Positions 29,312 through 50,173 of a DNA stretch of 64,000 nucleotides are shown here, in pieces. How positions within the stretch are numbered: position 1 is the first letter of the stretch; every line of letters starts with the position of its first letter. The notes beneath the pieces are model-generated. The model saw only the letters and a program-made list of their open reading frames with translations, was not told the origin of the DNA and made no database searches. The position numbers were made by a program, and so were the translations under genes. Location of the stretch: the IMG/VR virus record IMGVR_UViG_3300007513_000001, positions 186,001 to 250,000 of that record; one strand, written 5' to 3'.

Positions 29312-29758
29312 ATGGCAAACATAAAAAATCGCTGGAGAACGATGAGTTTAGTTTCTACGCATCTGTGTAAAACTAGCGACGTTGGATTTCATGGAAATCT
29401 TTTTGGAGGTAAGCTTTTAGCTTGGCTCGACGAAGCAGGAGCTGCTTTATCGGCTGAGTTTACAGAGACGGGAAAAATTGTTACGAAACATATTTCAGAA
29501 GTAAACTTTCAAAGCCCTGTCAGGCCAGGCCAGCTTATTAAGATTTATGGAAAGATTTTAAAAGTTGGAAAAACGTCTTTGACGATAGAAGTAGAAGCTA
29601 GGAGACACAGTATTTATAACGGAACGCAAAAACCAGTTTGTAAATGTCAGATGGTTTTTGTTAGAATCGATGGTGATGGAGAGGCTGTGCCTATCCCTCC
29701 CCATATTCACCAAAAATTCGCTCGGCCCATTGAAAGAGGAAATAAAGATGGAAAATAA
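29312..29758 (+). CDS. Hotdog-fold acyl-CoA thioesterase (YciA-like)
   Basis: HGNLFGGKLLAWLDEA, F..PV..G and VGKTS. Confidence 0.85.
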   Translation: MANIKNRWRTMSLVSTHLCKTSDVGFHGNLFGGKLLAWLDEAGAALSAEFTETGKIVTKHISEVNFQSPVRPGQLIKIYGKILKVGKTSLTIEVEARRHSIYNGTQKPVCKCQMVFVRIDGDGEAVPIPPHIHQKFARPIERGNKDGK

Positions 29759-30464
29759 ATCAATAGAGCTTTATGGAGACGGCATTGGCTCTGTAGATTA
29801 TGTCGACCACATGGGTTCCGATCTTACTATTGTCAACAGCGCTCGCGTATCATTTGGCAAGCAAAAAATGACAATGGATAAAAGAGATGAAAAACTTATT
29901 AAGTACCTTATGGAACACAAGCACACCTCAACGATGGAACACAATATTGTTACGTTTCGTTTTACTGTTCCTCTTTACGTTAGGTCTCAGCATCATCGTC
30001 ATAGAACTTGGTCCTATAATGAGATCTCTCGCAGATACACGGATGTAGATATTAGATTTTATGAACCAAAATCTTTTAGAACTCAGCATGAATCAAATCG
30101 ACAAGCGTCTAATACAAAAGAATTAATCAATCCAGAGTTAAATTTGGGCGGCGGCAAATATAAGATGACAGCTGCGGAGGCATCAATCGGACTTCGAAAT
30201 ACTTCACTAGAACTTTTTAATTTATTGATTGAATCTGGTGTTTGCCGAGAACAAGCCAGAGGAATACTCCCGCAAAACATGTACACAGAATACTATGGTA
30301 CTGTCGATCTAAATAATTTGCTTAAATTTGTTGAGCTTAGAACGCATGATGGTGCTCAGTGGGAAATTCAAAAAGTCGCTGAAGCTTGTTTAGATATTGC
30401 TGAAACTCTGTGGCCAATTACTATTAATTGTTACAGAGAAACTAGGGGCAAAACTCATGAATGA
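29748..30464 (+). CDS. thyX: Flavin-dependent thymidylate synthase
   Basis: RHRTWSYNEISRRY signature, ARVSF, EQAR..LP and AQWEI. Start at ATG 29748 with GAGG SD. Confidence 0.95.
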   Translation: MENKSIELYGDGIGSVDYVDHMGSDLTIVNSARVSFGKQKMTMDKRDEKLIKYLMEHKHTSTMEHNIVTFRFTVPLYVRSQHHRHRTWSYNEISRRYTDVDIRFYEPKSFRTQHESNRQASNTKELINPELNLGGGKYKMTAAEASIGLRNTSLELFNLLIESGVCREQARGILPQNMYTEYYGTVDLNNLLKFVELRTHDGAQWEIQKVAEACLDIAETLWPITINCYRETRGKTHE

Positions 30465-31490: not shown

Positions 31491-31513
31491 AGATTATTTG
31501 ATTGTGTTATAAT
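31485..31513 (+). promoter_or_regulatory. Sigma70-like promoter with extended -10, probably leaderless
   Basis: ATGTAA-N17-TATAAT with TG at -15/-14; ATG lies 6 nt downstream. Confidence 0.65.
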
Positions 31514-31519
31514 CAAATA

Positions 31520-32329
31520 ATGACGAATGAAGAATTCCAGCGCTTACTTGGAAAAGGTTTATGGTGGGACCAAGTAATTAATCCAAAGACAAGATCGTGC
31601 TACGATGATCTTAAAAATCTGCCGAATGTATTTGAGTGTTTCTGCCAGGCTCATCCCCTTCCAATACGCCCAGCTTTACCATATTACGATGGCGATAAAA
31701 AAATCACAACTTTGCTAGCAGGAATTCCAAGATCGGGAAACACTGTTACCTGGCAGATTTTAAACTCTTTAACCGATGGCCATGTTGTTAGAACCCACGG
31801 GTTTGCGGATAGCTGCCCTCTTTTATATGATTTTAGCGAAATTATTATAACTGTTAGGCACCCTTATGATGTAGCACATTCTATGAAAAGGCTGGGGTGG
31901 TATTCTAAAGAAAAAAATAAAGAAATTTGGAGCGATTTAAAAAACTTTACAAAGGTCAGTCAGTTTCAAAACTTAGGTTATCGCGCTGATTTAAAAATAA
32001 CGTATTTAAAATACGAAGAAGTCTGGAATAAGCCAGAGCAAAGAATAAGATATTTGAGCGACTTTTTAAATAAAAAACTGACAAATCAAGAGTTCAAAAA
32101 TGTTCTTTACGATACATCGATAGAAAAAAATATAAAAAGATCTAAAGCTCAAAGAATTCTATCTTTTAAAGCTGGGAAAAAGATTCAAGATAAAAATAAA
32201 ATTAATCCAAACCATATCGGCCCAAGAAAGGGTGCTCCCGGCGAAGGCCAAAATCTAAATAGAGATACGAAGATGGAAGTTTTTCAAACTTGCAGTTGGG
32301 CTTTTAATTGTTTTGGATATGAAAGATAG
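31520..32329 (+). CDS. Sulfotransferase-family protein
   Basis: 5'-PSB loop GIPRSGNT, 3'-PB motif VRHPYDVAHS and LKYEE. Confidence 0.7.
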   Translation: MTNEEFQRLLGKGLWWDQVINPKTRSCYDDLKNLPNVFECFCQAHPLPIRPALPYYDGDKKITTLLAGIPRSGNTVTWQILNSLTDGHVVRTHGFADSCPLLYDFSEIIITVRHPYDVAHSMKRLGWYSKEKNKEIWSDLKNFTKVSQFQNLGYRADLKITYLKYEEVWNKPEQRIRYLSDFLNKKLTNQEFKNVLYDTSIEKNIKRSKAQRILSFKAGKKIQDKNKINPNHIGPRKGAPGEGQNLNRDTKMEVFQTCSWAFNCFGYER

Positions 32330-32337
32330 GAGAAGAT

Positions 32338-33144
32338 ATGCCTGAAGGGCCAGAATGTAAAAGGATTGGGGAGTCTCTCGCTCGAGAAGTCTCTAATAAG
32401 ACCATCGTGGGTATCGATATTTTAGGAGGCAGATATACTAAGAAAGAGCCTTCCGGTTTATCAGATTTAATTTCTGAATTGCCAGTAGGCGTCGTTGGAG
32501 TGGGCGTGCATGGAAAATTTATTTATTGGATCTTGCTCAAAGAATACTCTCTTTGGAACACGTTGGGAATGAGTGGATTTTGGTCTGGTGAAAAACAAAA
32601 GCATTCTAGAATAAGATTTAGCTTTTTAGATGGCTCTCAAGTTTATTTTAACGACACTAGAAATTTTGGAACTGTTAAGTTAGTAAAGGGAAAATCTGAG
32701 CTAGTAAAAAAACTACAGTCTCTTGGACCAGACATGCTTTCAGAAGACGTAGAAGACTCAACTTTTATTTCAGCTTTAAGAAAAAAGAATAAGCACAACA
32801 TTTGCAAAGTTATCATGGATCAAAGCGTAATAGCTGGTGTCGGAAATTATGTAAAAGCAGAATCTCTTTGGCTTGCTAAAATTAATCCAGCTAACGCAGT
32901 ATCAGAGTTAAATGATGAAAAGCTTGTTTCGCTTAACACTTCTATAAAAAATGTTCTTAGAGCTTCTTACCAAAGCGGAGGAGCAACAATTAAATCATAT
33001 CAAAATTTTAACGGTGAAATTGGAGATTACTCTTCGAAGTTTTTAGTATATAATCAGAAAACTGATCCTCACGGAAACAAAGTAATCAAATATCGAACTC
33101 CAGACGGAAGAACGACGCACTGGGTACCAGAAATTCAAATTTAG
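32338..33144 (+). CDS. Fpg/Nei DNA glycosylase-AP lyase lacking a Zn finger
   Basis: N-terminal MPEGPE, HGKF, LGMSG, F.D.R.FG, LGPD and H2TH DQ..IAGVGNY...E.L. The C-terminus GRTTHWVP has no cysteines. Confidence 0.92.
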   Translation: MPEGPECKRIGESLAREVSNKTIVGIDILGGRYTKKEPSGLSDLISELPVGVVGVGVHGKFIYWILLKEYSLWNTLGMSGFWSGEKQKHSRIRFSFLDGSQVYFNDTRNFGTVKLVKGKSELVKKLQSLGPDMLSEDVEDSTFISALRKKNKHNICKVIMDQSVIAGVGNYVKAESLWLAKINPANAVSELNDEKLVSLNTSIKNVLRASYQSGGATIKSYQNFNGEIGDYSSKFLVYNQKTDPHGNKVIKYRTPDGRTTHWVPEIQI

Positions 33145-39300: not shown

Positions 39301-40146
39301 ATGGTTGAAAACTATATAAATTTAAATCAAGCGTTTGTTGAAGAATTAGTAGACCTCAAATTTAACGGTGAAGAAGTTAAGTCGAGAGGATTCACGCAAA
39401 AAGAAAAATTGTTTTGCTCTTTCATTATAAAAGATCCAACAGATCTAAAGATCAAAGTGCCCGCCCGCAAGTTTAATGAAGATTACGCTGTTTTAGAGTG
39501 GCTTTGGTATCTTACTTCCAATTGCGAAGTAAGCAATATTGGGAAGTTTGCTGATATATGGAATAAAATAGCTGATGAAGATAATTTAGTTGAATCAAAT
39601 TATGGAAGTTATATAAAGCCTGCTTGGTATGATTTAGTAAACGAGCTTCTTAACGATAGAGATACAAGAAGAGCTACTTGCGTAATTAACCAACCTCACC
39701 ATCGATGGAAAAATCCTAACGACTACCCCTGCACTCATTATATTCATTTTTTTATTAGAGGAGATGCTCTTCACTTGGGAGTTTACATGAGATCTAACGA
39801 TGCAGTTTTTGGTTTTTGCAATGACGTTTTTACTTTTGCGTTGTTTCAACAGCTTATGTTAAACGAACTAAATTCTCGTGGTGCTAATTTAAAGCTAGGC
39901 AATTATTACCATTCAGCTGGAAGCTTTCATGTTTATGATCGACATTACGAAATGCTAGAAAAAATCTCAAAAAACTACTTTAAGAAAGCTAGAAAAGAAG
40001 GGTATCCCACATTTGAAAAAATGACTTTAAATCCAGATTTAACTTGGCCAAAAATGGAAAAATTTATATCTTTTTTTGAAGAAAACCTAGACAAAGACGA
40101 AATATCGAGTAAGATTAAAGAGATTAGGGAGATTATCTTTCAATGA
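39301..40146 (+). CDS. Thymidylate-synthase-fold dNMP-modifying enzyme, dCMP hydroxymethylase-like
   Basis: TRRA, catalytic YPCT, MRSNDAVFGFCND and SFHVY. Has Asp at the position of E. coli ThyA Asn177. Confidence 0.85.
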   Translation: MVENYINLNQAFVEELVDLKFNGEEVKSRGFTQKEKLFCSFIIKDPTDLKIKVPARKFNEDYAVLEWLWYLTSNCEVSNIGKFADIWNKIADEDNLVESNYGSYIKPAWYDLVNELLNDRDTRRATCVINQPHHRWKNPNDYPCTHYIHFFIRGDALHLGVYMRSNDAVFGFCNDVFTFALFQQLMLNELNSRGANLKLGNYYHSAGSFHVYDRHYEMLEKISKNYFKKARKEGYPTFEKMTLNPDLTWPKMEKFISFFEENLDKDEISSKIKEIREIIFQ

Positions 40147-40424
40147 ATATTCTTGACGAAGCTAACAAAATTATTAACGAAAGATCTGAAGAAAAAGAAA
40201 GACAATATGGCCCGATGGGCGAAGGCTTAGAGCGCGCTGCAATGATTGCTTCTGGGATGACTGGAAAAGATTTTACTGCCGACGATATTTTTGCTGCTTT
40301 AGTAGCTCTTAAGTTTTCGAGGCACTCATACAATTATAAAGAAGATAATTTTTTAGATGCCGCAGCTTATCTGGGCGCGTGGAATAACTACATTCAAAAG
40401 GGTTTGAAAAATGAAAATAAGTAA
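40143..40424 (+). CDS. Small all-alpha protein (DUF6378 / NTP-pyrophosphohydrolase-like)
   Basis: IL.EA..II..R....YG and LK.SR.......D...D...Y pattern. Confidence 0.6.
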   Translation: MNILDEANKIINERSEEKERQYGPMGEGLERAAMIASGMTGKDFTADDIFAALVALKFSRHSYNYKEDNFLDAAAYLGAWNNYIQKGLKNENK

Positions 40425-40845
40425 AGTAAGAAGTGTTAAAACTCCAACTCGAGGAACTCCTGAATCTGCAGGCATAGATTTTTATGTTCCGCAAGGAATG
40501 GTTGTTAGCTTACCTCCGGGTTATTCTTGTTTGATGCCAAGCGGAATAAAGGCTAATGTTCCAGCAGGCCATGCTTTAATTGCATTTAACAAGAGTGGCG
40601 TAGCTGTAAAAAAGAATCTCCACGTCGGCGCATGCGTTGTTGATGAAGATTATCAAGGAGAGATCCATATTAACTTGATCAATGTTGGCAGAGAAACAGT
40701 GAAAATTTCTTCTGGAGAAAAAATTATACAATTTGTTTTACTTCCAGTATTTTATGACACAATTGAAGAAGTAGAACTAGAAAATCTTTATGAACAACAA
40801 ACCCAGCGCGGCGAAGGCGGATTTGGAAGTACGGGAGTTGAGTGA
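40411..40845 (+). CDS. dut: Trimeric dUTPase
   Basis: SAGIDF, KSG, VDEDYQGEI, IIQFV and RGEGGFGSTG. Confidence 0.93.
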   Translation: MKISKVRSVKTPTRGTPESAGIDFYVPQGMVVSLPPGYSCLMPSGIKANVPAGHALIAFNKSGVAVKKNLHVGACVVDEDYQGEIHINLINVGRETVKISSGEKIIQFVLLPVFYDTIEEVELENLYEQQTQRGEGGFGSTGVE

Positions 40846-41900
40846 TGAATTATTTTGTAGATTATGAATTACCAAAAAGTTGCAAAATCGGTATTGATGG
40901 ATTAGAGCGCAATATTCCAACTCGTAAACATAGTCACAACGCGGCTTGGGTTCATTTGTATAAAAACATGCTTCAATCTGCCGGCTGGGAAGACGTTCAC
41001 GTCTTGGGAAATCATGATACTTACGAAGGCTATGAAGCCATGATTTTTTATCCTGGAATTGCTTATTCGGGAGCCATTAATTTCTTTTTTGGAGTGGATG
41101 ATAATGTCGTTAGAAGATTTTCTAGAGTTCAAGACTTTGAAGGCCCGACATTTATTTTAAATCATGAAATGCCCCTTATCGGAAACACGATCAAAGGAAG
41201 ACTTCATAATAAATCTACTAGTAGTCGAGTTGGAAACCTTAAGCTAGACTTGTTAGACGATATCTGCAAGTCTACTCGTAGAATCGACTATGTAGAAAGA
41301 TCGAAAAAACTTTGTTTTGGAGACAGCCACTGCTTCTCAACTTATGCCCCCGGGTATTCTGTTTGTCGAAACGATGGTCTTACACTTTTTTCTACTTTAC
41401 GAAATGGAGTGAAGCAAACCATTGAAGAAAAATCGGGTATGATGACTAAAGATTTAACTCATCTTACGTTTTATATGGGTAATATTGATATTCGACATCA
41501 CCTCATGAGACAAGAAAACCCTTTTGAAAAAGCCCATGCAATGGGAATAGAATTGGGATACCAGCTTAAATCTTTAGGCATTCCAAACATAGAAATTGTT
41601 CACGTTCTTCCAATTGAAAATATTTCTCGAAAACTTCCAAAAACTGGCTACTATAAGAAGACTCCATATTTTGGAACTTGGGAAGAAAGAACCAAACTAG
41701 TCAATACATTTAACAACGCTGTGGATAAAATTTGTATAGAAAACAAATGGAATACTTTCCATTGGCCCGAAGAGTTTTTAAATGATTCTAAAGAGTTGGA
41801 TTTTGAATATATGGAGCGTCCAAAAAGTGTTCATTTAAGCCCAGTTTCTTATAGGTGGGATCTTTTTGAAAATAAATTAAATAGCTTGCATAGTAGCTAA
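40842..41900 (+). CDS. Conserved phage protein with an SGNH/GDSL-like C-terminal domain
   Basis: FGDSH (block I), G..L (block II), YMGNIDIRHH (block III) and SVHL (block V). Confidence 0.55.
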   Translation: MMNYFVDYELPKSCKIGIDGLERNIPTRKHSHNAAWVHLYKNMLQSAGWEDVHVLGNHDTYEGYEAMIFYPGIAYSGAINFFFGVDDNVVRRFSRVQDFEGPTFILNHEMPLIGNTIKGRLHNKSTSSRVGNLKLDLLDDICKSTRRIDYVERSKKLCFGDSHCFSTYAPGYSVCRNDGLTLFSTLRNGVKQTIEEKSGMMTKDLTHLTFYMGNIDIRHHLMRQENPFEKAHAMGIELGYQLKSLGIPNIEIVHVLPIENISRKLPKTGYYKKTPYFGTWEERTKLVNTFNNAVDKICIENKWNTFHWPEEFLNDSKELDFEYMERPKSVHLSPVSYRWDLFENKLNSLHSS

Positions 41901-41914
41901 AAATGGAGAAAAAT

Positions 41915-43105
41915 ATGCCAAAAAATAAATCAATTCGAGTTGCAATTGTCGGTGTCGGAAATTGCGCTAATTCTTTCTATCAAGGATTAACATATTATGC
42001 TGGATACACCGAAGGCCAAGAGCGCGACGGCGTTATGAAGAGCCGAATCGGAGGATATTCAGTAGCTGACCTCGATGTTGTAGCTGCGTTTGATATAGAC
42101 AAAAGAAAAGTCGGCAAGTGTTTTAGAGAAGCTATGTGGGCTAAACCAAACTGTACTCCAGAATATGAACCTAATGTTCCCGATGGTCCAATAGTTCAGA
42201 TGGGCCCAGTGTTAGATGGGGTACCGTCTTTGATGAAATCTTATCCAGACGATGAAGCTTTTAGACCAGCTGATTTAGAGCCCGTAGATGTGGCTCAGAT
42301 ATTAACAGACTTAAAGGTGGATATTCTAATCAACTATCTACCAGTGGGTTCTCAGAAGGCTACTGAGTGGTATGCAGAACAGTGTCTAAAGACGGGAGTT
42401 TCTCTTCTTAACTGTATTCCAGTCTTTATTGCTTCTAATCCAATTTGGGAACAGAAGTTTATTGATGCTGGAATTCCTTTGGTTGGGGACGATATGAAAT
42501 CTCAGTTTGGGGCGTCTATTTTATCTCAAATGCTGCAAGAATTAGCTTTCGCCCGAGGACTAAATGTGAATGCTCATATTCAGCGTAATGTTGGTGGAAA
42601 TACTGATTTCTTGAATATGGTCGATCAATCTAGGTTAAAGTATAAAAAGGTTTCTAAGGAAAATGTAATTCGATCTCAGCATGTTATCAGGGGAGTTGAT
42701 CCAGAAGAATCATTCTTACATGCTGGCCCTTCAGAATATATTCGTTTTTATGGAGATAACAAGGTTGCCAATTTTAGAGTAGAGATGGAAGGTTTCCTCG
42801 GCGCACCAGTAATTCTAGACGCGCAACTTTCCGTAATCGACTCTCCAAACTCTGGTGGAGTTGTTATCGACGCGGCTCGATATCTAAAGGTTGCGAGAGA
42901 AATGGGGATTGTTGGAGCTTTGCGTGGGCCATCTGCCTTTACGCAAAAAACCCCGCCCCAACAATTAATGTTTTCAGAAACTCTTTACGAATGCGACGCT
43001 CTTTCAGAGAGAAAGCTTACTAGATTTACAAAGAGGCAAACTCAAAATTACAGTGCGGAAGAGTTGTATCAATCTTGCCCAGCAGGAAACAAGGAAGTAG
43101 ATTAA
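41915..43105 (+). CDS. ino1: Myo-inositol-1-phosphate synthase (bacterial/archaeal type)
   Basis: VAIVGVGNCA, AFDID.RKVG, NYLPVGS, GDD.KSQ.GA, NVGGNTDFLNM, YGDNK and DSPNSGGVVIDA. Confidence 0.95.
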   Translation: MPKNKSIRVAIVGVGNCANSFYQGLTYYAGYTEGQERDGVMKSRIGGYSVADLDVVAAFDIDKRKVGKCFREAMWAKPNCTPEYEPNVPDGPIVQMGPVLDGVPSLMKSYPDDEAFRPADLEPVDVAQILTDLKVDILINYLPVGSQKATEWYAEQCLKTGVSLLNCIPVFIASNPIWEQKFIDAGIPLVGDDMKSQFGASILSQMLQELAFARGLNVNAHIQRNVGGNTDFLNMVDQSRLKYKKVSKENVIRSQHVIRGVDPEESFLHAGPSEYIRFYGDNKVANFRVEMEGFLGAPVILDAQLSVIDSPNSGGVVIDAARYLKVAREMGIVGALRGPSAFTQKTPPQQLMFSETLYECDALSERKLTRFTKRQTQNYSAEELYQSCPAGNKEVD

Positions 43106-43106
43106 A

Positions 43107-43823
43107 ATGCCGAAAATCCACGAGCAAAAAGGGAAATTATTTAATCCTGAAGCTGGAAATTTTGAAGAATGCATTATTAAACTAAACCCTCGTAATAACT
43201 TTTGGTATCGTCCTGGCACTTTTGATCTTAATTCTATTAGAGAGTGCCGAGACAACTATAGTGAAATAGACACTTGCGGAAAAGTTGTTCTAGATCTGGG
43301 TGCCAATATTGGCGGTTTTGCTCGGATGGCTCTTCAAAAGGGCGCGAAACAAGTTATTGCTCTAGAGCCGTGCCCATATAATTTTCAACTGCTAGAGATT
43401 AATGCTGAAAATGCTGAAAACATAAATGCAGCAGTTTCAGAAGAAGATACTGATAGCGTTGTTTTTCATTATGCTAGTTCTAAAAGAAATTCTGTTTCTT
43501 CTTCTACGGTTCGACGCAGAAACGCTTCGGGAACCACTATTTCAGTCCCAGGCCTTTCTTTTGGAGGGCTATTAGAGAAATATAAGCCTGAAATTCTTAA
43601 AATTGATATCGAAGGAAAAGAGTATGATATTTTAGATTCGATTAAAGAGATACCAGATTTTGTAGAAGTTGTTGGTATTGAATTTCACAATACTCGAAAA
43701 CCATATTCGGAATATCCTTCTCGTTTTTTTCCAGAATCTACTTGGAAAAAAGTAGAGCACCCTATTTTGATGTACGGACAGAAAAAGGTTTTAGATTACA
43801 CATTTTATCGCAAAGTTGTTTAG
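43107..43823 (+). CDS. FkbM-family SAM-dependent (O-)methyltransferase
   Basis: VLDLGANIG, ALEP...NF..L..N and LKIDIEG.EY....EFH. Confidence 0.88.
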   Translation: MPKIHEQKGKLFNPEAGNFEECIIKLNPRNNFWYRPGTFDLNSIRECRDNYSEIDTCGKVVLDLGANIGGFARMALQKGAKQVIALEPCPYNFQLLEINAENAENINAAVSEEDTDSVVFHYASSKRNSVSSSTVRRRNASGTTISVPGLSFGGLLEKYKPEILKIDIEGKEYDILDSIKEIPDFVEVVGIEFHNTRKPYSEYPSRFFPESTWKKVEHPILMYGQKKVLDYTFYRKVV

Positions 43824-43832
43824 GAGAAAATA

Positions 43833-44249
43833 ATGGTTGTTAATGGTTTTGATATTGACGGAGTGATTCACCTTGGAGATAGTGTCTGTGGAATCCGCCC
43901 TGGTCCTGGTGATGTGATTATTACCGGTCGAAGTTTTGAGGAAGAGGCCGAAACTCTAGCTTTTCTTCGTCGTAATGGAATTAATAATCCAGTATTTTTT
44001 AACCAGTGTCATTATGATGAAAAAACTCGTGAAGGTTCTGGTTGGCACAAAGGCGAAACTATTAAGTTGTTGCATCGAGCTGGCCTCAGCATTCGATATT
44101 TTTTCGAAGACGATGAAGTTCAAAAAGCCGAAATTGAAAGAATTTTAGCAGAAAAAGAAATCTGGAATATGCCAACCAAAGTAATTCACGTTAACAATCC
44201 ACATGTAGCGAAAGAGAATAGACGTCACTTAGAGGATTTACATGAGTAA
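43833..44249 (+). CDS. Capless HAD phosphatase
   Basis: GFDIDGVI, IITGRS, HK and FFEDD. Confidence 0.85.
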   Translation: MVVNGFDIDGVIHLGDSVCGIRPGPGDVIITGRSFEEEAETLAFLRRNGINNPVFFNQCHYDEKTREGSGWHKGETIKLLHRAGLSIRYFFEDDEVQKAEIERILAEKEIWNMPTKVIHVNNPHVAKENRRHLEDLHE

Positions 44250-45687
44250 TTCTGAGCTTCTTAAAATGACTGATAAGCAGCTTTTTGATGAAATTCCCTC
44301 TCATAAAAAGCAAGATTTTATAGACTTTATAAAAGAGCTTAATCGAAGAGAGTATTTAGTTAGATTTGCAAAATCGTGCACCTTTGAAAGCTTTCAGCAT
44401 TTACCTGGTACTTCTTTTAAATTTGGTAATGGTTTTATCGTAAATGGAAAATCAGTCCCTTATTTCCACCCCAATCGTAGCTTTCATGATGAAATTATTT
44501 GGTTGAATGAAAATCTTTTCTACAACCCTCATGCTACTTTTGAAGACAAGCTCATCAACGCAGCGATTGTAAAGTTTTATGGGCCATCTAACACTTTGAA
44601 GCTTATTGCTAGCGGAACAGGAAAGAATTTTGTAGATTATAAACGATTCATAGGAGACGCTAAGTATCTTCAACAAGTTTGTGTAAATTTGGAAACAGCT
44701 GTGAAAAATAAAGAGAAGATATACGGAACCACAGAACTAAGAACAAGCCTACAAACTGCTGCTCGAAACTACGCAAGAGACGTTGGTTCTCCAATAGATA
44801 AACTTGAATTAATTCCGTTGGTAGATAGAAAAGTTAGATCATGTCGACCTTCTGATATTCTTTTTTGGTTTACTAAGATCGGTCCAGATTTTGTAAATTT
44901 TTATAAGAAGACTCCAAACATGGAAGAGTCTTTCAAGTTTTTAAATTCTTTTAGAGGGATTGGAAATTATTATGGTTATCATTTTAGTTGCAATCTTGCT
45001 CGTATGCCCTCCGTTGGAAATTTAATATTCAAGGGTACCCCTGGCAAAATCGATGAAGATGATGAATATGTTGTTCCGGGTGTTGGAGCGATGTCTGCGA
45101 TAAATTGGTTTTATGAACACCGCGGCCACTCTATAAACACAAAAGTTGGAAAAAAATTAATAAACGCTATTCGCGAACACCAAAATGATTTCTTCGATTT
45201 AAAGAAATCTGACAATTCTAAATTTTATATGGAAAAAGTTTCTGAGCTTGGGTATTTTACTAATTTCGGCTGTGAAATATCTTGCTGCCAGTTCGGAGTT
45301 TATCGAAGATTAAGAGAAGATAAAAAATTAGCTTTAAGAAGAGCAGCTGCACCAATTTCAAAAGAGGAAGTCAAAATGATTCTTACGCCAAAAACCCTAA
45401 TGCAAAAACTGGGTCTTATTTCAGAAGATAAGCCTTCTGAAGAACACATCCAAACCACCAATCCCGCTTTAGATTTTTCTTCTACAAGCAAAGAAGATTT
45501 AATTCTTGCTATTGTCGATGAATCTGGAGGAGCTTGTTCACATTCTGCAGTGGCAAAAATGATAGAAGAAAAGGGATATACTCAATATAAACAGTCTGGA
45601 AGCTGGAAAGAAAGCTGGGTAATAATGAGAGAATTAGTTAAAAAGGGTGCTCTAGTTAAAGATGGAAAATTTTATCGGAGGTCGTAA
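44242..45687 (+). CDS. aGPT-Pplase / amino acid:DNA transferase-like protein (HhH glycosylase fold) with a C-terminal wHTH-like tail
   Basis: GIGNYYGYH...NL (HhH), VVPGVGA..AI and EISCCQF..Y, matching the family G.G.f.a / GpGa / E...Ce..ky pattern. Confidence 0.65.
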   Translation: MSNSELLKMTDKQLFDEIPSHKKQDFIDFIKELNRREYLVRFAKSCTFESFQHLPGTSFKFGNGFIVNGKSVPYFHPNRSFHDEIIWLNENLFYNPHATFEDKLINAAIVKFYGPSNTLKLIASGTGKNFVDYKRFIGDAKYLQQVCVNLETAVKNKEKIYGTTELRTSLQTAARNYARDVGSPIDKLELIPLVDRKVRSCRPSDILFWFTKIGPDFVNFYKKTPNMEESFKFLNSFRGIGNYYGYHFSCNLARMPSVGNLIFKGTPGKIDEDDEYVVPGVGAMSAINWFYEHRGHSINTKVGKKLINAIREHQNDFFDLKKSDNSKFYMEKVSELGYFTNFGCEISCCQFGVYRRLREDKKLALRRAAAPISKEEVKMILTPKTLMQKLGLISEDKPSEEHIQTTNPALDFSSTSKEDLILAIVDESGGACSHSAVAKMIEEKGYTQYKQSGSWKESWVIMRELVKKGALVKDGKFYRRS

Positions 45688-46865
45688 TGCAAAACGTGAG
45701 GTGGGGAACTATCATTCCCCTTATTGGGGGTAGCGCTATAGGGTGCTCTCAAGCCACTAAAAATAAGCCAGAATTTCATCTTAGTTATTCTGCTTTTGGC
45801 GCTAACGAAAAGTATTTAACCGATTATTGGAAAGACGTACCTCGTATAGTTTTAGATGAAGGTGGAGAAATCCCAAATCAGCAAATTGATTTTATCAACT
45901 CAGTTTGTCCATGCGCGGGTTTAAGTCAGCTTAATACTTCTAGAAGCAAAGATATGCGTGAATCTAAAAATTACTGGATGTACGAATCCGCTCAAAGGAT
46001 AATGGGAGAACTTAAACCGAGAGTTTACTGGGGAGAAAATGCTCCCGGCCTTTTTACTAATTCGGGTGCGTACGTACGTGACAAGCTTAAAACCCTGGCC
46101 AAAGAACATGGTTATTCCTTTTCTCTTTATAAAACTGATACTCAAAAACATGGAATACCACAGCGAAGAGTAAGAACTTTTTATTTTTTTTGGAGAGATA
46201 CTAATCCGCCTATTTTAAATTATTTTGATCAAACTCCTGTCCCTTTTGCAGAGTACATCAAAGAGATACCAGATACAGCAACTTTACAAGATCAGTTTAA
46301 TATTGCGGGAAAAATTTCTGACAATTTTGATTCTTACGCTTTCGTTCTTCAGAAGTTGAAAATAACCCACAGAGAATTCGTGAAATCTAATGATTCCGGG
46401 TCTATTCATTCAATTTTTTCTTACCTTGCTGAAAATGAACTTTTAAAAGAGTGCATAGACTGGATAGAAAAAAACAAAAATGAAGAAACAGCTGAACACA
46501 GAAGATTGAAAGCTATTTATAAAAAAGTTCAATCTGGTGGGAGATTTATGGATGCTTCTCCGGGGTATTATTATGCTAGAACTAACGCTATAGTGGGAAG
46601 GACTTTAACGCATTTAGTTCACCCCACTGAAGATCGCGGCATGTCTATTCGAGAGCTGCTTCATATGATGGGGCTGCCTCATGACTTTGAAATGAGCGAT
46701 AGAAAATCCTTGAATGTAATAGCGCAGAACGTTCCTACGTGTACAGCCCGAGATATGGCTACTCAAGTTATTGAATACTTAAACGGTGGTTTACAAATTG
46801 CAGAAAACAGTTTTTTAATGCAAAATAACTTAAAACAGGAGACCACGTTATGCGAGCCCTTGTAA
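45687..46865 (+). CDS. DNA cytosine-C5 methyltransferase-fold protein with an atypical motif I
   Basis: Motif IV CPCAGLS, VI ENAP, VIII PQRRVR, IX R.MS.RE...MGLP and X AQNVP. Motif I reads IPLIGG instead of FxGxGG. Confidence 0.85.
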   Translation: MQNVRWGTIIPLIGGSAIGCSQATKNKPEFHLSYSAFGANEKYLTDYWKDVPRIVLDEGGEIPNQQIDFINSVCPCAGLSQLNTSRSKDMRESKNYWMYESAQRIMGELKPRVYWGENAPGLFTNSGAYVRDKLKTLAKEHGYSFSLYKTDTQKHGIPQRRVRTFYFFWRDTNPPILNYFDQTPVPFAEYIKEIPDTATLQDQFNIAGKISDNFDSYAFVLQKLKITHREFVKSNDSGSIHSIFSYLAENELLKECIDWIEKNKNEETAEHRRLKAIYKKVQSGGRFMDASPGYYYARTNAIVGRTLTHLVHPTEDRGMSIRELLHMMGLPHDFEMSDRKSLNVIAQNVPTCTARDMATQVIEYLNGGLQIAENSFLMQNNLKQETTLCEPL

Positions 46866-47836
46866 CTGGAGGTTGCGGATTTATTGGATCATGCATCTCT
46901 AAAAAATTAGTAGATTCAGGATGGGATGTTGAGATAGTTGACGATATGTCTAATGGGAATTATGAGTTTTTAGATGGCTATCGCATAAGATCAGTTCCGG
47001 TTCAGCTTGGTGAAAGTTTTGAAAACCAAGTCAAAAAGCAAGAACATCAAATTTTAGTTTTGGTTGGAGATTTTACTAGCTACGAAGTCGTTAGAAGAAT
47101 TGTGGAAAAAAAATATGATGTAATATTTCATTGCGCAGCCAATCCACGCGTAGAATACTCAGTTCAAAACCCTGTTGAAACAACAGACGAAAATCTAACT
47201 AAAACAATTAAGCTTTTTACTCACTCTATTGGAAACGTCAAAAGGATAGTGTTTTCCTCTAGTTGTTCAATATACGGTGATCCGTGGACTCTTCCTACTA
47301 CAGAATCTCACGGAAAAAATCCAAATAGTCCATACGCGCTTCAAAAGCTTTGTGTCGAAGAGTTTGCGCGACTGTATTCTAAAACTTATGATTTAGACAT
47401 AGCTTGTTTGCGATACTTCAATGTTTATGGCCCTTATCAATATGGAGGGTCTCCATATTCTACAGCTATCGTATCTTGGTGTGACAAAGTAAAAAATGGT
47501 TTACCGCTTCGCAGTGATGGTGATGGAACGCAGTCTAGAGATATGGTTTTTGTAGAAGACGTTGCGAGAGCAAATATTTTAGCTGCGACTCATAAAGAAA
47601 ACTTTAGTGGAAAATGCATTAATATTGGAACTGGAGCTTCTTATACTAATAATCAAATTTTAGATATTTTTAAGTCTAAGTTTCCCGACATAGAAATTAG
47701 TCATGCACCAGAAAGATCCGGAGACGTAAAACACACTCAGGCATGCACAAAAGAAGCAAGGAATTTTTTAGGATTCAGAACTGAATATTCTTTAGAAGAA
47801 GGTCTAGAAAAAACTTTTGACTGGTGGGAGATTTGA
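46850..47836 (+). CDS. NAD-dependent NDP-sugar epimerase/dehydratase
   Basis: GGCGFIG, FSSS...YG, YALQK, LRYFNVYGP and GDG.Q.RD. Confidence 0.92.
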   Translation: MRALVTGGCGFIGSCISKKLVDSGWDVEIVDDMSNGNYEFLDGYRIRSVPVQLGESFENQVKKQEHQILVLVGDFTSYEVVRRIVEKKYDVIFHCAANPRVEYSVQNPVETTDENLTKTIKLFTHSIGNVKRIVFSSSCSIYGDPWTLPTTESHGKNPNSPYALQKLCVEEFARLYSKTYDLDIACLRYFNVYGPYQYGGSPYSTAIVSWCDKVKNGLPLRSDGDGTQSRDMVFVEDVARANILAATHKENFSGKCINIGTGASYTNNQILDIFKSKFPDIEISHAPERSGDVKHTQACTKEARNFLGFRTEYSLEEGLEKTFDWWEI

Positions 47837-48393
47837 TGAAAAATGAATTTGTTATGTTTGTCGGACCCATGTTTGGTGGGAAAACTACTAAACTTTTAAG
47901 CGCGATAGACAGATATCGATATCAAGGTAGAGACATTCATGTGTTTAAACCGATAGTAGATGAAAGATATTCTAAGGAAGAAATAGTAACCCATTGGGGA
48001 ACTAAAATTCCAGCTACTAGAATCACCTCTCCAGTTAGCAGCCTTCATCCAGTATTTGAGCCTTTCTATCACCTTAAAGAATCTTGCGTTTTAGCAGTAG
48101 ATGAAGCTTTTATGTTAGAGGGAGTTGGAAAAGTTTTGGTCGACCTGTTTAGAAGAGGCCACACAGTGCTTGTTTCTTCTCTTCAGCTTTCTTCTGATTT
48201 TACTCCATATAAAGAGCTTCAAACCATGCTTCCGTACGCTACAAAAGTAGAAGTTTGTCCGGCAGTATGCTCTACGTGCGGCGCAGACGCGCACTATACT
48301 AAAAAGGTTGGCGGTCGTTCTGATCACGCAATCGAGGTAGGGGGATCAGAGATGTATCAGCCTAAGTGTTTAGAGCATTTTTATTTGGGATAA
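47836..48393 (+). CDS. tdk: Thymidine kinase
   Basis: GPMFGGKTT, D.RY, VDEA, C..CG and Y.P.C..H. TGATG coupling to the preceding gene. Confidence 0.9.
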   Translation: MKNEFVMFVGPMFGGKTTKLLSAIDRYRYQGRDIHVFKPIVDERYSKEEIVTHWGTKIPATRITSPVSSLHPVFEPFYHLKESCVLAVDEAFMLEGVGKVLVDLFRRGHTVLVSSLQLSSDFTPYKELQTMLPYATKVEVCPAVCSTCGADAHYTKKVGGRSDHAIEVGGSEMYQPKCLEHFYLG

Positions 48394-48395
48394 TT

Positions 48396-48424
48396 ATGAA
48401 ATTCTAGTTAATTCTAGTTATAAT
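48396..48424 (+). promoter_or_regulatory. Sigma70-like promoter containing a 10-bp direct repeat
   Basis: ATGAAA-N17-TATAAT; ATTCTAGTTA occurs twice at 48401-48420. Confidence 0.5.
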
Positions 48425-48428
48425 TTTA

Positions 48429-48869
48429 TTGAAGGATATTTTAACATTGTCAGACAAACACCACAAATCATCTTGGAAGTCTAGATCTTCTCTTGCTGTT
48501 ACCCCATGGGGATCTGAGATCCGATGGGCTGCAACTGCCGGAGTAAATGGAAAATGCCTCAGCATTAACAAGGGCATGAGAACAAGCTTAAAATACTATA
48601 AGTTAAAAGACGAAGTTCTTTTTCTTTACAAGGGGAAGATTTTAGTAACTCACGGAGATGAAAAAACTATAACGCATCCAGAAACACATCCATATGTTCA
48701 ATCTATTCTTGCGCCTGGAGAAATGGTAATAGTGCAGAGCCATTGCCCTTACAGGATTGAAGCTTTAGAAGATTCTGAAGTTATTGAAATAGGCTCTCGA
48801 GGTCCAGGCGACACAGTCATGCTGGAGGATGATTTCGGGAGAGCAGATAAAGCAGATAAGGAGCTTTAA
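48429..48869 (+). CDS. Cupin (mannose-6-phosphate-isomerase type II C-terminal-like); start uncertain
   Basis: PWG.E, TSL..Y..K.E, RI.A.EDS...E and EDDFGR. Confidence 0.7.
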   Translation: MKDILTLSDKHHKSSWKSRSSLAVTPWGSEIRWAATAGVNGKCLSINKGMRTSLKYYKLKDEVLFLYKGKILVTHGDEKTITHPETHPYVQSILAPGEMVIVQSHCPYRIEALEDSEVIEIGSRGPGDTVMLEDDFGRADKADKEL

Positions 48870-49775
48870 ATGACAGTAACTGACCCATCTTCAGTCAATG
48901 TAGTGATATATCACGCAGACTGCACTGACGGATTCGGAGCTGCATACGCAGCTTGGAAACTACTTGGAAATAGAGCTGAATATCATGCATGTAAACATGG
49001 TAAACCACCGCCAGACGTAAAAGGAAAAGTTGTTGCTATTTTAGATTTTTCTTATGACAATGCTACAACTAAACGAATGATAGAAGACGCGGAAGGGCTG
49101 ATCATCATCGATCATCATAAGTCAGCAGTCGTAGAATTGCACGATATCAGTAATGCTATTTTTGATATGGCTCATTCTGGAACAGTTCTTTCTTGGAACT
49201 TTTTTCACCCGGGAAAAGAATCTCCTAAGTTTTTGACTTATATTGAAGATCGCGATCTTTGGAAGTGGGAACTCCCATATTCAAAAGAATTTAGTGCAGC
49301 ATTTGATATGGTTCCATTTGAATTCGAGGAATTTGAAAAATTTGAAGACGATTCTGTATTCGATGACGCTGTAAAACGAGGTTCTTACATTTTGGCGTAT
49401 TCAAAAACTGTTGTAAAGAAAGTTTGTGAAAAAGCTGAGCCGAGAAAGTTTGAAGGTAAGGATGTACTAGTCGTCAATGCGTCTCACTGGATGTCAGAGA
49501 TTGGAGCTCGTCTTTCTCCAGACTGCGATTTTGCGATGATCTGGTATTGGGATCACGTTGCGCAGCACACTAAAGTTTCTCTAAGAGCTTTTCATGAAAC
49601 TGTGGACGTTTCTGAAATTTCTAAAAAGTTCGGTGGCGGCGGCCACAAAAAAGCAGCTGGATTTCAGCTTTCCAAAAGTAAGCATGTTGAAGATTTATTT
49701 GATAAGCCGAAAACAACTAGAAAAAAATCTACTAAATCTTCAGCTAAAACTGTAAAGAAAACGGAGACTTCTTGA
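48870..49775 (+). CDS. DHH/DHHA1 phosphoesterase
   Basis: YH.DC.DG, DHH, EDRDLW, SLR and GGGGH..AAG. Confidence 0.9.
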   Translation: MTVTDPSSVNVVIYHADCTDGFGAAYAAWKLLGNRAEYHACKHGKPPPDVKGKVVAILDFSYDNATTKRMIEDAEGLIIIDHHKSAVVELHDISNAIFDMAHSGTVLSWNFFHPGKESPKFLTYIEDRDLWKWELPYSKEFSAAFDMVPFEFEEFEKFEDDSVFDDAVKRGSYILAYSKTVVKKVCEKAEPRKFEGKDVLVVNASHWMSEIGARLSPDCDFAMIWYWDHVAQHTKVSLRAFHETVDVSEISKKFGGGGHKKAAGFQLSKSKHVEDLFDKPKTTRKKSTKSSAKTVKKTETS

Positions 49776-50173
49776 GACCGTCGTGGGATAAAATATGGAT
49801 GGATTTCGCAAGCTCAATCGCTGAGAGATCTTACGACCCAAGATTTCAAGTGGGCGCTGTTATTATTACTGAAGACAACAGCCAAGTTTTAGCTGTTGGA
49901 TATAACGGAAATTACGCTGGAGGTCCCAATGAAGTAGAATCAGAAACCCCTGGGGAATCTGGCATGCTTCATGCTGAAATTAATGCATTACTTAAAATGG
50001 ATTACAACAACCCTAAAAAGAAAAAGCTTTATCTAACTCTTTCTCCTTGTAGAATGTGCGCAAAGGCTATAATTAATAGCGGAATTAATGAAGTAGTTTA
50101 TGCTGAATCTTATAGGGACCTATCGGGGATAGAACTTTTAAAAGAATGTGGCATATCTGTAAGACACGTTTGA
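49772..50173 (+). CDS. dCMP deaminase
   Basis: VGAVI, GYNG, HAE.NA and SPC.MC. Confidence 0.92.
   Translation: MRPSWDKIWMDFASSIAERSYDPRFQVGAVIITEDNSQVLAVGYNGNYAGGPNEVESETPGESGMLHAEINALLKMDYNNPKKKKLYLTLSPCRMCAKAIINSGINEVVYAESYRDLSGIELLKECGISVRHV

What the first reader, a model, noticed from the sequence alone, without database searches (positions are those of the whole stretch)
45687..46865. C5-MTase with intact catalytic motifs but a non-canonical SAM loop (IPLIGG)
The PC, EN and RxR motifs are kept while FxGxGG is replaced. Ordinary C5 methylation would conflict with C5 already being substituted at the nucleotide level. C5-MTases are known to activate hmC and couple nucleophiles in vitro without SAM, and some variants use SAM analogues such as carboxy-SAM. 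Inference: this protein may be a sequence-specific installer or editor of the hypermodification rather than a plain methylase.
Basis: partly seen in the sequence, partly recalled or inferred. Interest (0 to 1): 0.65.

Follow-up and report, generated by a model that had tools for sequence, protein, structure and literature searches.

The report
Phage C5-methylase relative, remodelled cofactor loop
A marine jumbo phage that makes 5-hydroxymethyl-dCMP also encodes a relative of cytosine-C5 DNA methylases that keeps all catalytic residues but has a rebuilt cofactor pocket, and this enzyme type always travels with hydroxymethylcytosine genes, so its chemistry needs testing.

Summary
ORF 45687-46865 (+, 392 aa) has the C5-cytosine DNA methyltransferase fold and keeps the catalytic PC, EN(A) and QxRxR motifs. 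It reads I-P-L-I-G-G where FxGxGG normally sits.

This is not a one-off. The same motif-I variant is invariant across a large, mostly viral clade (437 clusters at E<=1e-30). The same clade also has Gln to Ala after the catalytic Cys, ENV to ENA and GNxVP to AQNVP.

The neighbouring thymidylate-synthase homologue carries the signature of a dCMP hydroxymethylase. Every clade-bearing viral contig that is at least 30% complete (14 of 14) also encodes such an enzyme.

The "installer/editor" reading is neither shown nor excluded:
- **For it:** the strict link to 5hmC genes, and a natural equivalent of the engineered Q82A pocket-widening change.
- **Against it:** dedicated transferases of different kinds sit next to a constant methylase-like gene. 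The Asn that CmoX swaps to bind carboxy-SAM is retained, and the genome has no CmoA. Eukaryote-like relatives are fused to CXXC and TET domains.

My best guess (about 0.4) is a post-replicative C5 methylase for cytosines that escaped replacement. A real 5hmC-dependent chemistry remains about 0.25 likely.

The parts
45687..46865 (+). C5-cytosine DNA methyltransferase-fold protein (392 aa), member of a distinct virus-centred clade
   Evidence: ORF; PF00145 3.1e-19; AF2 model pLDDT 89.6; structural matches to DNMT1, CmoX, HaeIII and HhaI at Z 23-25; 2882 word-search homologues; 437 clusters at E<=1e-30
45714..45734 (+). Motif I variant I-P-L-I-G-G-S in place of F-x-G-x-G-G
   Evidence: invariant in the family; alignment to canonical enzymes
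45906..45917 (+). Motif IV C-P-C-A: catalytic Cys76, with Ala77 at the M.HhaI Gln82 position
   Evidence: phmmer alignment to M.HhaI; invariant in the family; Q82A effect in PMC3526304
46035..46043 (+). Motif VI E-N-A (ENV with Val replaced by Ala)
46161..46175 (+). Motif VIII Q-R-R-V-R (QxRxR)
46725..46736 (+). Motif X Q-N-V-P: Asn348 at the M.HhaI Asn304 / CmoX Arg350 position
   Evidence: CmoX criterion from PMC12783734
39301..40146 (+). Thymidylate-synthase homologue with the dCMP hydroxymethylase signature (predicted 5-hm-dCMP synthase)
   Evidence: PF00303; best PDB matches MilA and T4 gp42; diagnostic residues
40143..40845 (+). DUF6378 protein and trimeric dUTPase, a conserved pair that follows the hydroxymethylase in several clades
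40842..44249 (+). Inositol module: unknown 352-aa protein, myo-inositol-1-phosphate synthase, FkbM methyltransferase, small HAD/PNKP-like phosphatase
   Evidence: conserved together in other lineages
44242..45687 (+). 481-aa all-helical protein with an HMUDK_hel-type domain and a C-terminal winged helix; candidate DNA-level transferase; its stop overlaps the methylase-like start
   Evidence: PF18723 3.4e-7 here, 1e-12 in relatives; phrog_17781 7e-91; AF2 pLDDT 70.5
46850..47836 (+). NAD-dependent epimerase/dehydratase overlapping the 3' end of the methylase-like gene
   Evidence: the same kind of gene flanks the methylase-like gene in other clades
47824..50173 (+). Thymidine kinase, cupin-like 146-aa protein, DHH/DHHA1 phosphoesterase, dCMP deaminase (nucleotide-pool genes of the same operon)

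Best explanation
The gene encodes an active DNA-acting enzyme of the C5-cytosine methyltransferase superfamily. It belongs to a separate, mostly viral clade whose cofactor pocket has been rebuilt in one fixed way. It sits inside a 5-hydroxymethylcytosine hypermodification module. In that module the phage makes 5-hm-dCMP with a TS homologue, incorporates it, and decorates it with products of a variable donor cassette; here that cassette is an inositol-phosphate synthase set plus an HMUDK_hel-type protein.

The mechanism I think most likely is as follows. After replication the enzyme flips out cytosines that were incorporated unmodified. Cys76 attacks C6, with Glu117 and Arg161/Arg163 assisting. 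A one-carbon group is then transferred from SAM, or a close sulfonium analogue, bound in a non-canonical pose. Sites that escaped nucleotide-level replacement therefore also end up blocked at C5.

Shown: the fold, the catalytic motifs, the family-wide fixed pocket changes, the genomic association and the dCMP-hydroxymethylase signature. Inferred: the substrate (unmodified C), the cofactor (SAM) and the product (5mC).
For: - **Catalytic apparatus:** it is complete and invariant across the clade.
- **N-terminal subdomain:** it is as conserved as the core, with 12 invariant positions in the first 60 residues, so the pocket is functional and not decaying.
- **Motif X Asn:** Asn348 is retained at the position that CmoX changes to Arg when the cofactor changes.
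- **Transferases differ between clades while this gene stays constant:** AGT-like, GT-B-like and HMUDK_hel proteins all occur beside it, so it is not the donor-specific installer.
- **S-TIM5-type cyanophages:** they have the gene with a dCMP-specific ThyA-like enzyme and no transferase nearby.
- **Eukaryote-like relatives:** they nest inside the clade, keep the same motif I variant, and are fused to CXXC, C2H2 and TET2-like domains. In those settings a 5mC writer is the simplest role.
- **Residual C is plausible:** no MazG, PRA-PH or dUTPase_2-type dCTPase is detectable in the complete genome.
Against: - **Lost SAM contacts:** the Phe and first Gly of motif I have no equivalent. By the offsets of the structural alignments, the ribose-binding Glu of motif II falls on S33-S35, not on an acidic residue, although this mapping is approximate.
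- **Q82-equivalent Ala:** in M.HhaI the Q82A change cuts methylation about 16-fold.
- **Below curated threshold:** the protein scores under NCBIfam's dcm cut-off.
- **Tight linkage to hydroxymethylase genes:** a plain anti-restriction methylase would not be expected to occur only with dCMP hydroxymethylase genes (14/14).
- **Possible lack of substrate:** DUF6378 or the dUTPase homologue could be the missing dCTPase, which would leave no unmodified C.
- **No biochemical data exist for any member of the clade.**
Confidence: 0.4

Rival explanations
1. 5hmC editor. The enzyme flips 5hmC, or an activated 5-CH2-OX derivative. Cys76 adds at C6, the oxygen substituent leaves to give an exocyclic methylene intermediate, and a nucleophile bound in the former SAM site is coupled to give 5-CH2-Nu-cytosine. 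No SAM is needed.
For: - Strict co-occurrence with dCMP hydroxymethylase genes across phages with different replicative polymerases.
- Smaller residues at two positions facing C5 and the transferable group: Q82-equivalent Ala77 and ENV to ENA.
- The TET2-fused relative P0265 additionally has Gly at the N304 position. That is the same pair of positions altered in the engineered M.SssI Q142A/N370A, and the engineered eM.SssI couples thiols to 5hmC.
- M.HhaI adds formaldehyde to C, and methylases can remove it from 5hmC.
- The canonical SAM loop is lost.
Against: - No conserved partner supplies a common nucleophile, and the donor cassettes differ between clades.
- O-glycosylation of 5hmC by GTs needs no C6 activation.
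- In water, an unactivated hydroxyl nucleophile competes poorly.
- S-TIM5-type phages have the gene without any donor cassette.
- Phage members keep Asn at the N304 position.
- A predicted complex with the neighbouring 481-aa protein gave no verdict.
Confidence: 0.25
2. Alkyltransferase with an unusual donor. The enzyme acts on unmodified C like CmoX, but transfers a group larger than methyl from a SAM-derived or other nucleoside-containing donor held in the rebuilt pocket.
For: - Precedent: CmoX is a phage C5-methylase homologue that uses carboxy-SAM, and it ranks third among structural matches.
- The Q82A-like change favours larger groups in M.HhaI.
- Five pocket changes are fixed together across the clade.
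- An NAD-dependent epimerase/dehydratase gene abuts the methylase-like gene in two clades.
Against: - No cofactor-synthase gene is conserved beside it.
- The complete genome has no CmoA.
- Asn, not Arg, sits at the N304 position, and VCPC replaces SPPC.
- It needs C5-H substrates, the same limitation as the best explanation.
Confidence: 0.2
3. Non-catalytic DNA-binding or base-flipping accessory: a pseudo-enzyme that presents bases to the neighbouring transferases.
For: The start codon overlaps the upstream gene in several clades, and the SAM loop is lost.
Against: The catalytic Cys, Glu and both Arg residues are invariant over 437 clusters and in eukaryote-like relatives. The upstream partner differs between clades. 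The complex prediction gave no support.
Confidence: 0.05

Closest known systems
Bacterial/phage type II C5-cytosine methyltransferases (M.HhaI, M.HaeIII, Dcm; Pfam PF00145)
   Same: Same fold (Z 22-24). Motifs IV (PC), VI (EN), VIII (QxRxR) and the Asn of motif X are kept, and a target-recognition domain lies between motifs VIII and IX.
   Different: Motif I FxGxG is absent, replaced by I-P-L-I-G-G. The residue after the catalytic Cys is Ala, not Gln. ENV becomes ENA and GNxVP becomes AQNVP. The target-recognition region is conserved across the clade instead of varying. The protein scores below NCBIfam's dcm cut-off. It is not paired with a restriction enzyme, and it is linked to dCMP hydroxymethylase genes.
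CmoX, phage DNA cytosine C5-carboxymethyltransferase using carboxy-SAM (PDB 8YF3; PMC12783734)
   Same: A phage C5-methylase homologue whose altered pocket changes the transferred group. It is part of a hypermodification pathway and is a top structural match (Z 24.4).
   Different: CmoX is defined by SPPC and Arg350 and by a CmoA neighbour. Here the motifs are VCPC and Asn348, and the complete genome has no CmoA. CmoX keeps the Phe of motif I and the ribose-binding Glu.
Engineered pocket-widened C5-methylases (M.HhaI Q82A/N304A, M.SssI Q142A/N370A) and their atypical reactions
   Same: The clade naturally carries Ala at the Q82 position, and the TET-fused relative also has Gly at the N304 position. 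Engineered enzymes of this kind transfer bulky groups, and eM.SssI couples thiols to 5hmC.
   Different: Those are laboratory variants with an intact motif I, acting with synthetic cofactors or high concentrations of exogenous reagents. No natural enzyme is known to use such reactions.
T4-type 5hmC pathway (gp42 dCMP hydroxymethylase plus DNA glucosyltransferases) and phage MT-TET-GT pathways
   Same: Nucleotide-level 5hm-dCMP synthesis is followed by DNA-level decoration. One related cluster has a T4 AGT-like gene directly upstream of the methylase-like gene.
   Different: T4 has no C5-methylase homologue. In MT-TET-GT pathways the methylase supplies 5mC to a TET enzyme, but no Tet_JBP gene is found in this complete genome.

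Membership tests
C5-cytosine DNA methyltransferase superfamily (PF00145 fold) | Overall fold and a significant profile match | tested here: met
   PF00145 E=3.1e-19; AF2 model matches DNMT1, HhaI, HaeIII and CmoX at Z 22-25 over 270-330 residues
C5-cytosine DNA methyltransferase superfamily (PF00145 fold) | Motif IV Pro-Cys catalytic nucleophile | tested here: met
   P75-C76 aligns to HhaI P80-C81; invariant in the family
C5-cytosine DNA methyltransferase superfamily (PF00145 fold) | Motif VI Glu-Asn and motif VIII QxRxR | tested here: met
   E117-N118 and R161/R163 align to HhaI E119-N120 and R163/R165; invariant
Canonical SAM-dependent C5 methylases (Dcm/HhaI type) | Motif I F-x-G-x-G SAM-binding loop | tested here: not met
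   I-P-L-I-G-G sits in its place, or F-x-G is deleted. Pfam, PADLOC and NCBIfam alignments all start after this region
Canonical SAM-dependent C5 methylases (Dcm/HhaI type) | Motif II acidic residue binding the SAM ribose, and motif III Asp binding adenine | tested here: inconclusive
   E41 and D57 are conserved, but the sequence alignments disagree. Structural-alignment offsets place the motif II position near S33-S35. No residue-level superposition was available.
Canonical SAM-dependent C5 methylases (Dcm/HhaI type) | Curated family score (NCBIfam TIGR00675 dcm) | tested here: not met
   41.2 bits against a cut-off of 100.65
Canonical SAM-dependent C5 methylases (Dcm/HhaI type) | SAM binding and methyl transfer to C5 of cytosine in DNA | not testable with these tools
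   Needs biochemistry; no member of this clade has been assayed in the literature I could search
CmoX carboxy-SAM C5-carboxymethyltransferases | SPPC motif and Arg at the HhaI N304 position | tested here: not met
   VCPC and Asn348; criteria from PMC12783734
CmoX carboxy-SAM C5-carboxymethyltransferases | Phage-encoded CmoA (Cx-SAM synthase) | tested here: not met
   No TIGR00740 match in the complete 293-kb genome
Phage MT-TET(5mYOX)-GT cytosine hypermodification | TET/JBP dioxygenase in the genome | tested here: not met
   No PF12851 match in the complete genome, although the control genomes did not ring either. A TET2-like domain was found only in a distant eukaryote-like relative.
dCMP hydroxymethylase (T4 gp42 type), for the neighbouring TS homologue | Asp at ThyA N177 (cytosine), Asp retained at D169 (not a 5hoC synthase), Ser/Arg at the deoxyribose positions, Asp at L143 | tested here: met
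   RSNDAVFGFCND and NDYPC in the window protein; criteria from PMC13326640 and PMC5175136

The most novel reading that the evidence does not exclude
The clade is a natural family of C5-methylase-fold enzymes that no longer methylate. Instead they use Cys-C6 covalent catalysis on 5-hydroxymethylcytosine in DNA, supplied by a dCMP hydroxymethylase in phages and by a fused TET in eukaryote-like relatives, to exchange or elaborate the 5-CH2-OH group. This would be the natural counterpart of the 'atypical' reactions so far seen only in vitro.
Probability: 0.25. Interest if true: 0.9.

Novelty: new variant of a known kind. Interest (0 to 1): 0.6.

Why it matters
C5-methylase homologues have only recently been shown to do more than methylate; CmoX was reported in 2025. 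This clade is large and environmentally widespread, and it has a fixed, unusual cofactor pocket. It is tied genomically to 5hmC production in phages with several different replication machineries, and apparently to TET in eukaryote-like relatives.

If it is a plain methylase, it shows that the FxGxG loop is dispensable, and that 5hmC phages run a second, DNA-level safeguard for C5. If it acts on 5hmC, it would be a new enzymatic route of DNA hypermodification and a ready-made tool for 5hmC labelling. Two cultured phages carry relatives (Pseudoalteromonas phage vB_Psh_XG4 and cyanophage S-TIM5), so the question can be tested directly.

Tried and rejected
- **Carboxy-SAM (CmoX-type) enzyme: rejected.** Asn348 instead of Arg, VCPC instead of SPPC, and no CmoA in the genome.
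- **Methylase feeding a TET: rejected for this phage.** No Tet_JBP match in the genome.
- **Neighbouring TS homologue as a 5-hydroxycytosine synthase or dUMP hydroxymethylase: rejected.** Asp at both the D169 and N177 positions.
- **Complex prediction of the 481-aa upstream protein with the methylase-like protein:** no verdict (score 0.00). This is not evidence either way.
- **Fold of the 481-aa protein:** AF2 pLDDT 70.5, and Foldseek against the PDB found nothing beyond a C-terminal winged helix.
- **PDB sequence searches** for DUF6378, the 481-aa protein and the 352-aa protein found nothing.
- **ESM Atlas search** for DUF6378 gave no usable hit.
- **Megablast of the cluster against phage records:** no match.
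- **Sequencing runs:** only marine and seawater metagenome contigs hold the stretch, with no raw reads or RNA. I did not use read laying, because contigs cannot show base modification.
- **Literature searches** found no description of this clade or of inositol-containing phage DNA.
Full report
**Setting.** The window is positions 186001-250000 of a complete 293,409-bp viral genome with direct terminal repeats. Near-identical sequence occurs only in marine and seawater metagenomes. No close relative exists among deposited phage genomes.

**The observation.**
- ORF 45687-46865 (+) encodes 392 aa.
- It has a GGAGG ribosome-binding site, and its ATG overlaps the stop of the upstream gene as TAATG.
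- Pfam assigns it to PF00145 (C5 cytosine DNA methylase) at E=3.1e-19, but the match starts only at profile position 56. PADLOC methylase models likewise start at residue 40 or later.
- NCBIfam's dcm model scores 41 bits against a cut-off of 100.65.
- Alignment to M.HhaI gives these equivalences: P75-C76-A77 = P80-C81-Q82, E117-N118-A119 = E119-N120-V121, and R161/R163 = R163/R165.
- An AlphaFold2 model built on 30 homologues is confident (pLDDT 89.6). It matches DNMT1, CmoX, the Cp-933R prophage methylase, HaeIII and HhaI at Z 23-25.
- In an alignment with E. coli Dcm and two ordinary phage C5-methylases, F-x-G-x-G-G is replaced by I-P-L-I-G-G. A profile-profile alignment instead treats F-x-G as deleted.
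- Either way, the adenine-stacking Phe and the first Gly are gone.

**It is a family trait.**
- A word-based search found 2882 homologues.
- An exhaustive profile search found 437 clusters (at 50% identity) with E<=1e-30.
- In 30 diverse members the following positions are invariant: P11, L12, G14, G15, S16, G19, C20, P28, F37, N40, E41, W48, C74-P75-C76, G78-L79-S80, G116-E117-N118-A119-P120, P158-Q159, R161, R163, H312-P313, R317 and A346-Q347-N348-V349-P350.
- Across 86 family ORFs from fetched loci, the motifs PL[IV]GG, CPCAGLS, GENAP and QNVP are nearly universal.
- The cofactor-side subdomain is therefore under the same purifying selection as the catalytic core. The pocket is rebuilt, not decayed.
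- A long branch separates the clade from ordinary C5-methylases.
- Only six matches occur in 185,579 prokaryotic species genomes. Five are in metagenome-assembled contigs, one of them identical to a viral contig. The sixth is a frameshifted prophage copy.

**The premise that C5 is already substituted.** The TS homologue at 39301-40146 matches MilA CMP hydroxymethylase (2e-22) and T4 gp42 (3e-18) better than any thymidylate synthase. Its diagnostic residues are:
- Asp at the ThyA N177 position, which indicates a cytosine substrate.
- Asp retained at D169, so it is not a 5-hydroxycytosine synthase by the criterion of PMC13326640.
- Ser and Arg at the positions that MilA changes in order to accept ribose (PMC5175136).
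- Asp three residues before the catalytic Cys, as in gp42.

It is therefore predicted to be a 5-hm-dCMP synthase.

**Association.** Every relative examined lies in a phage that has such an enzyme.
- Direct examples are L004, L005, phage XG4, and the 420-aa clade, where the two genes lie about 30-60 kb apart. S-TIM61 has a ThyA-like enzyme with Asp at N177.
- Of all viral contigs at least 30% complete that carry the methylase-like gene, 14 of 14 also carry a divergent TS homologue. Contigs without one are fragments of 26% completeness or less.
- Of the 20 divergent TS homologues recovered in those searches, 19 show the RSND..G...D and D-x-x-C-T signatures. The twentieth is cut off by a contig end.
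- The carrier phages have different replicative polymerases, Pol III alpha or family B.

**Neighbours.**
- In this window the gene is preceded by an unknown 352-aa protein, myo-inositol-1-phosphate synthase, an FkbM methyltransferase, a small HAD/PNKP-like phosphatase and a 481-aa HMUDK_hel-domain protein. It is followed by an NAD-dependent epimerase/dehydratase.
- The inositol set recurs next to the methylase-like gene in distant lineages, there accompanied by a GT4 glycosyltransferase.
- Other clades have different genes at the same place:
  - a cytidylyltransferase plus a T4 AGT-like glucosyltransferase;
  - a HAD, a nucleotidyltransferase/kinase and GT-B-like proteins;
  - a large amino-sugar cluster with an epimerase directly upstream.
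- The donor-specific transferases therefore vary while the methylase-like gene stays constant.
- This genome has no CmoA and no detectable TET/JBP. It has several GT1 and GT2 genes 75-100 kb away. It has no recognisable MazG, PRA-PH or dUTPase_2-type dCTPase.

**What the pocket changes suggest.**
- In CmoX, adenine stacks on Phe25 and Phe48, the ribose binds Glu47, and Arg350 (HhaI Asn304) binds the extra carboxylate.
- By the offsets of the structural alignment, Phe25 falls on Ile10 and Glu47 falls near Ser33-Ser35. This mapping is approximate, so I rate motif II as inconclusive.
- Asn348 is kept, which argues against carboxy-SAM.
- Ala77 replaces the conserved Gln82. In M.HhaI the Q82A change lowers methylation about 16-fold and raises transfer of a larger group 4-fold, and Gln82 was judged the residue most important for methyl transfer (PMC3526304).
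- The analogous M.SssI Q142A/N370A is the standard pocket-widened variant. An engineered M.SssI couples thiols to 5hmC, and M.HhaI adds formaldehyde to C.
- The clade thus naturally carries one of the two engineered changes.

**Eukaryote-like relatives.**
- The exhaustive search also returned longer proteins from short, gene-sparse marine metagenome contigs.
- These keep the motif I variant and the catalytic motifs, and they carry extra domains: a CXXC zinc finger (P0124), or C2H2-type fingers with Lys/Glu-rich tails (P0121, P0123, P0170).
- In P0265 (47 cluster members), a C2H2 finger sits upstream of the methylase-like domain and a TET2-like Cys-rich/DSBH region sits downstream (E=1.5e-12 to human TET2).
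- Five of these relatives nest next to the 420-aa phage clade (SH-aLRT 97). P0265 sits on a long basal branch (a quick tree only).
- P0265 has Gly at the Asn304 position.
- These fusions tie the clade to the 5mC/5hmC pathway. They can be read either as 'writer plus oxidase' or as 'oxidase plus 5hmC editor'.

**Weighing.**
- Firm conclusions: this is an active-looking DNA C5 enzyme of a distinct clade, and it is a constant companion of nucleotide-level 5hmC synthesis.
- I favour a post-replicative methylase for residual cytosines (0.4). The reasons are that the chemistry needs the fewest assumptions, the installers are clearly other proteins, S-TIM5-type phages have it without installers, the CXXC and TET fusions fit a writer, and full exclusion of dCTP is not evident.
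- The 5hmC-editor reading (0.25) and a larger-group donor (0.2) remain real possibilities. The reasons are the lost SAM contacts, the Q82A-like change and the strict link to hydroxymethylase genes.
- A pseudo-enzyme is unlikely (0.05).
- None of these readings can be settled without biochemistry. The experiments are simple, and cultured carriers exist.

Noticed in passing
window 40842-45687 (also L010-L016, L080, L081, L084): A conserved 'inositol module' sits inside a 5hmC gene cluster and recurs in distant phage lineages. It comprises an unknown 352-aa protein, myo-inositol-1-phosphate synthase, an FkbM methyltransferase, a small HAD phosphatase and an HMUDK_hel-domain protein. This suggests an inositol-containing DNA hypermodification, which I could not find described in the literature searched.
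   Followed up: partly
P0124, P0121, P0123, P0170, P0265; loci L134-L136: Members of the same methylase-like clade occur on gene-sparse marine metagenome contigs as longer, eukaryote-like proteins fused to CXXC or C2H2 zinc fingers. In P0265 the fusion partner is a TET2-like domain. Five of them nest beside a phage clade in the tree, which suggests transfer between viruses and eukaryotes.
   Followed up: partly
L100 2967-4229 (Victivallis vadensis DSM 14823 contig): The only copy found in an isolate genome lies in a lambda-like prophage, next to portal, capsid and terminase genes. It has a 1-nt frameshift exactly inside motif I: I-I-P-L-I-G, then a change of frame.
   Followed up: partly
L001 4763-5599 (-) = L006 (Cyanophage S-TIM61 'ThyA'): The annotated ThyA of S-TIM5-type cyanophages has Asp at the E. 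coli N177 position (RSNDMATGVPLD). This predicts a dCMP-specific enzyme, making 5-methyl- or 5-hydroxymethyl-dCMP, rather than a thymidylate synthase.
   Followed up: partly
genome G000 about 83-88 kb and 105-113 kb (outside the window): Seven GT1/GT2 glycosyltransferase-domain matches lie in two clusters far from the hydroxymethylase operon. Their targets (DNA, virion or host) are unknown.
   Followed up: no
window 29658-30464, 31502-32329, 32338-33144: ThyX, a sulfotransferase-domain protein and an Fpg/Nei-type DNA glycosylase lie upstream of the polymerase. ThyX and Fpg are also conserved near the cluster in related phages (L005, the P0059 context).
   Followed up: no
L096 (contig labelled Pacearchaeota MAG, 425 kb) and L087 (IMG/VR contig): The methylase-like proteins on these two contigs are identical. 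Several 'bacterial or archaeal MAG' contigs that carry the gene are probably mis-binned phage contigs.
   Followed up: no
window 40143-40845: The DUF6378 plus trimeric dUTPase pair always follows the hydroxymethylase. The genome has no recognisable MazG, PRA-PH or dUTPase_2 dCTPase, so one of these two may be the dCTP-excluding enzyme.
   Followed up: partly
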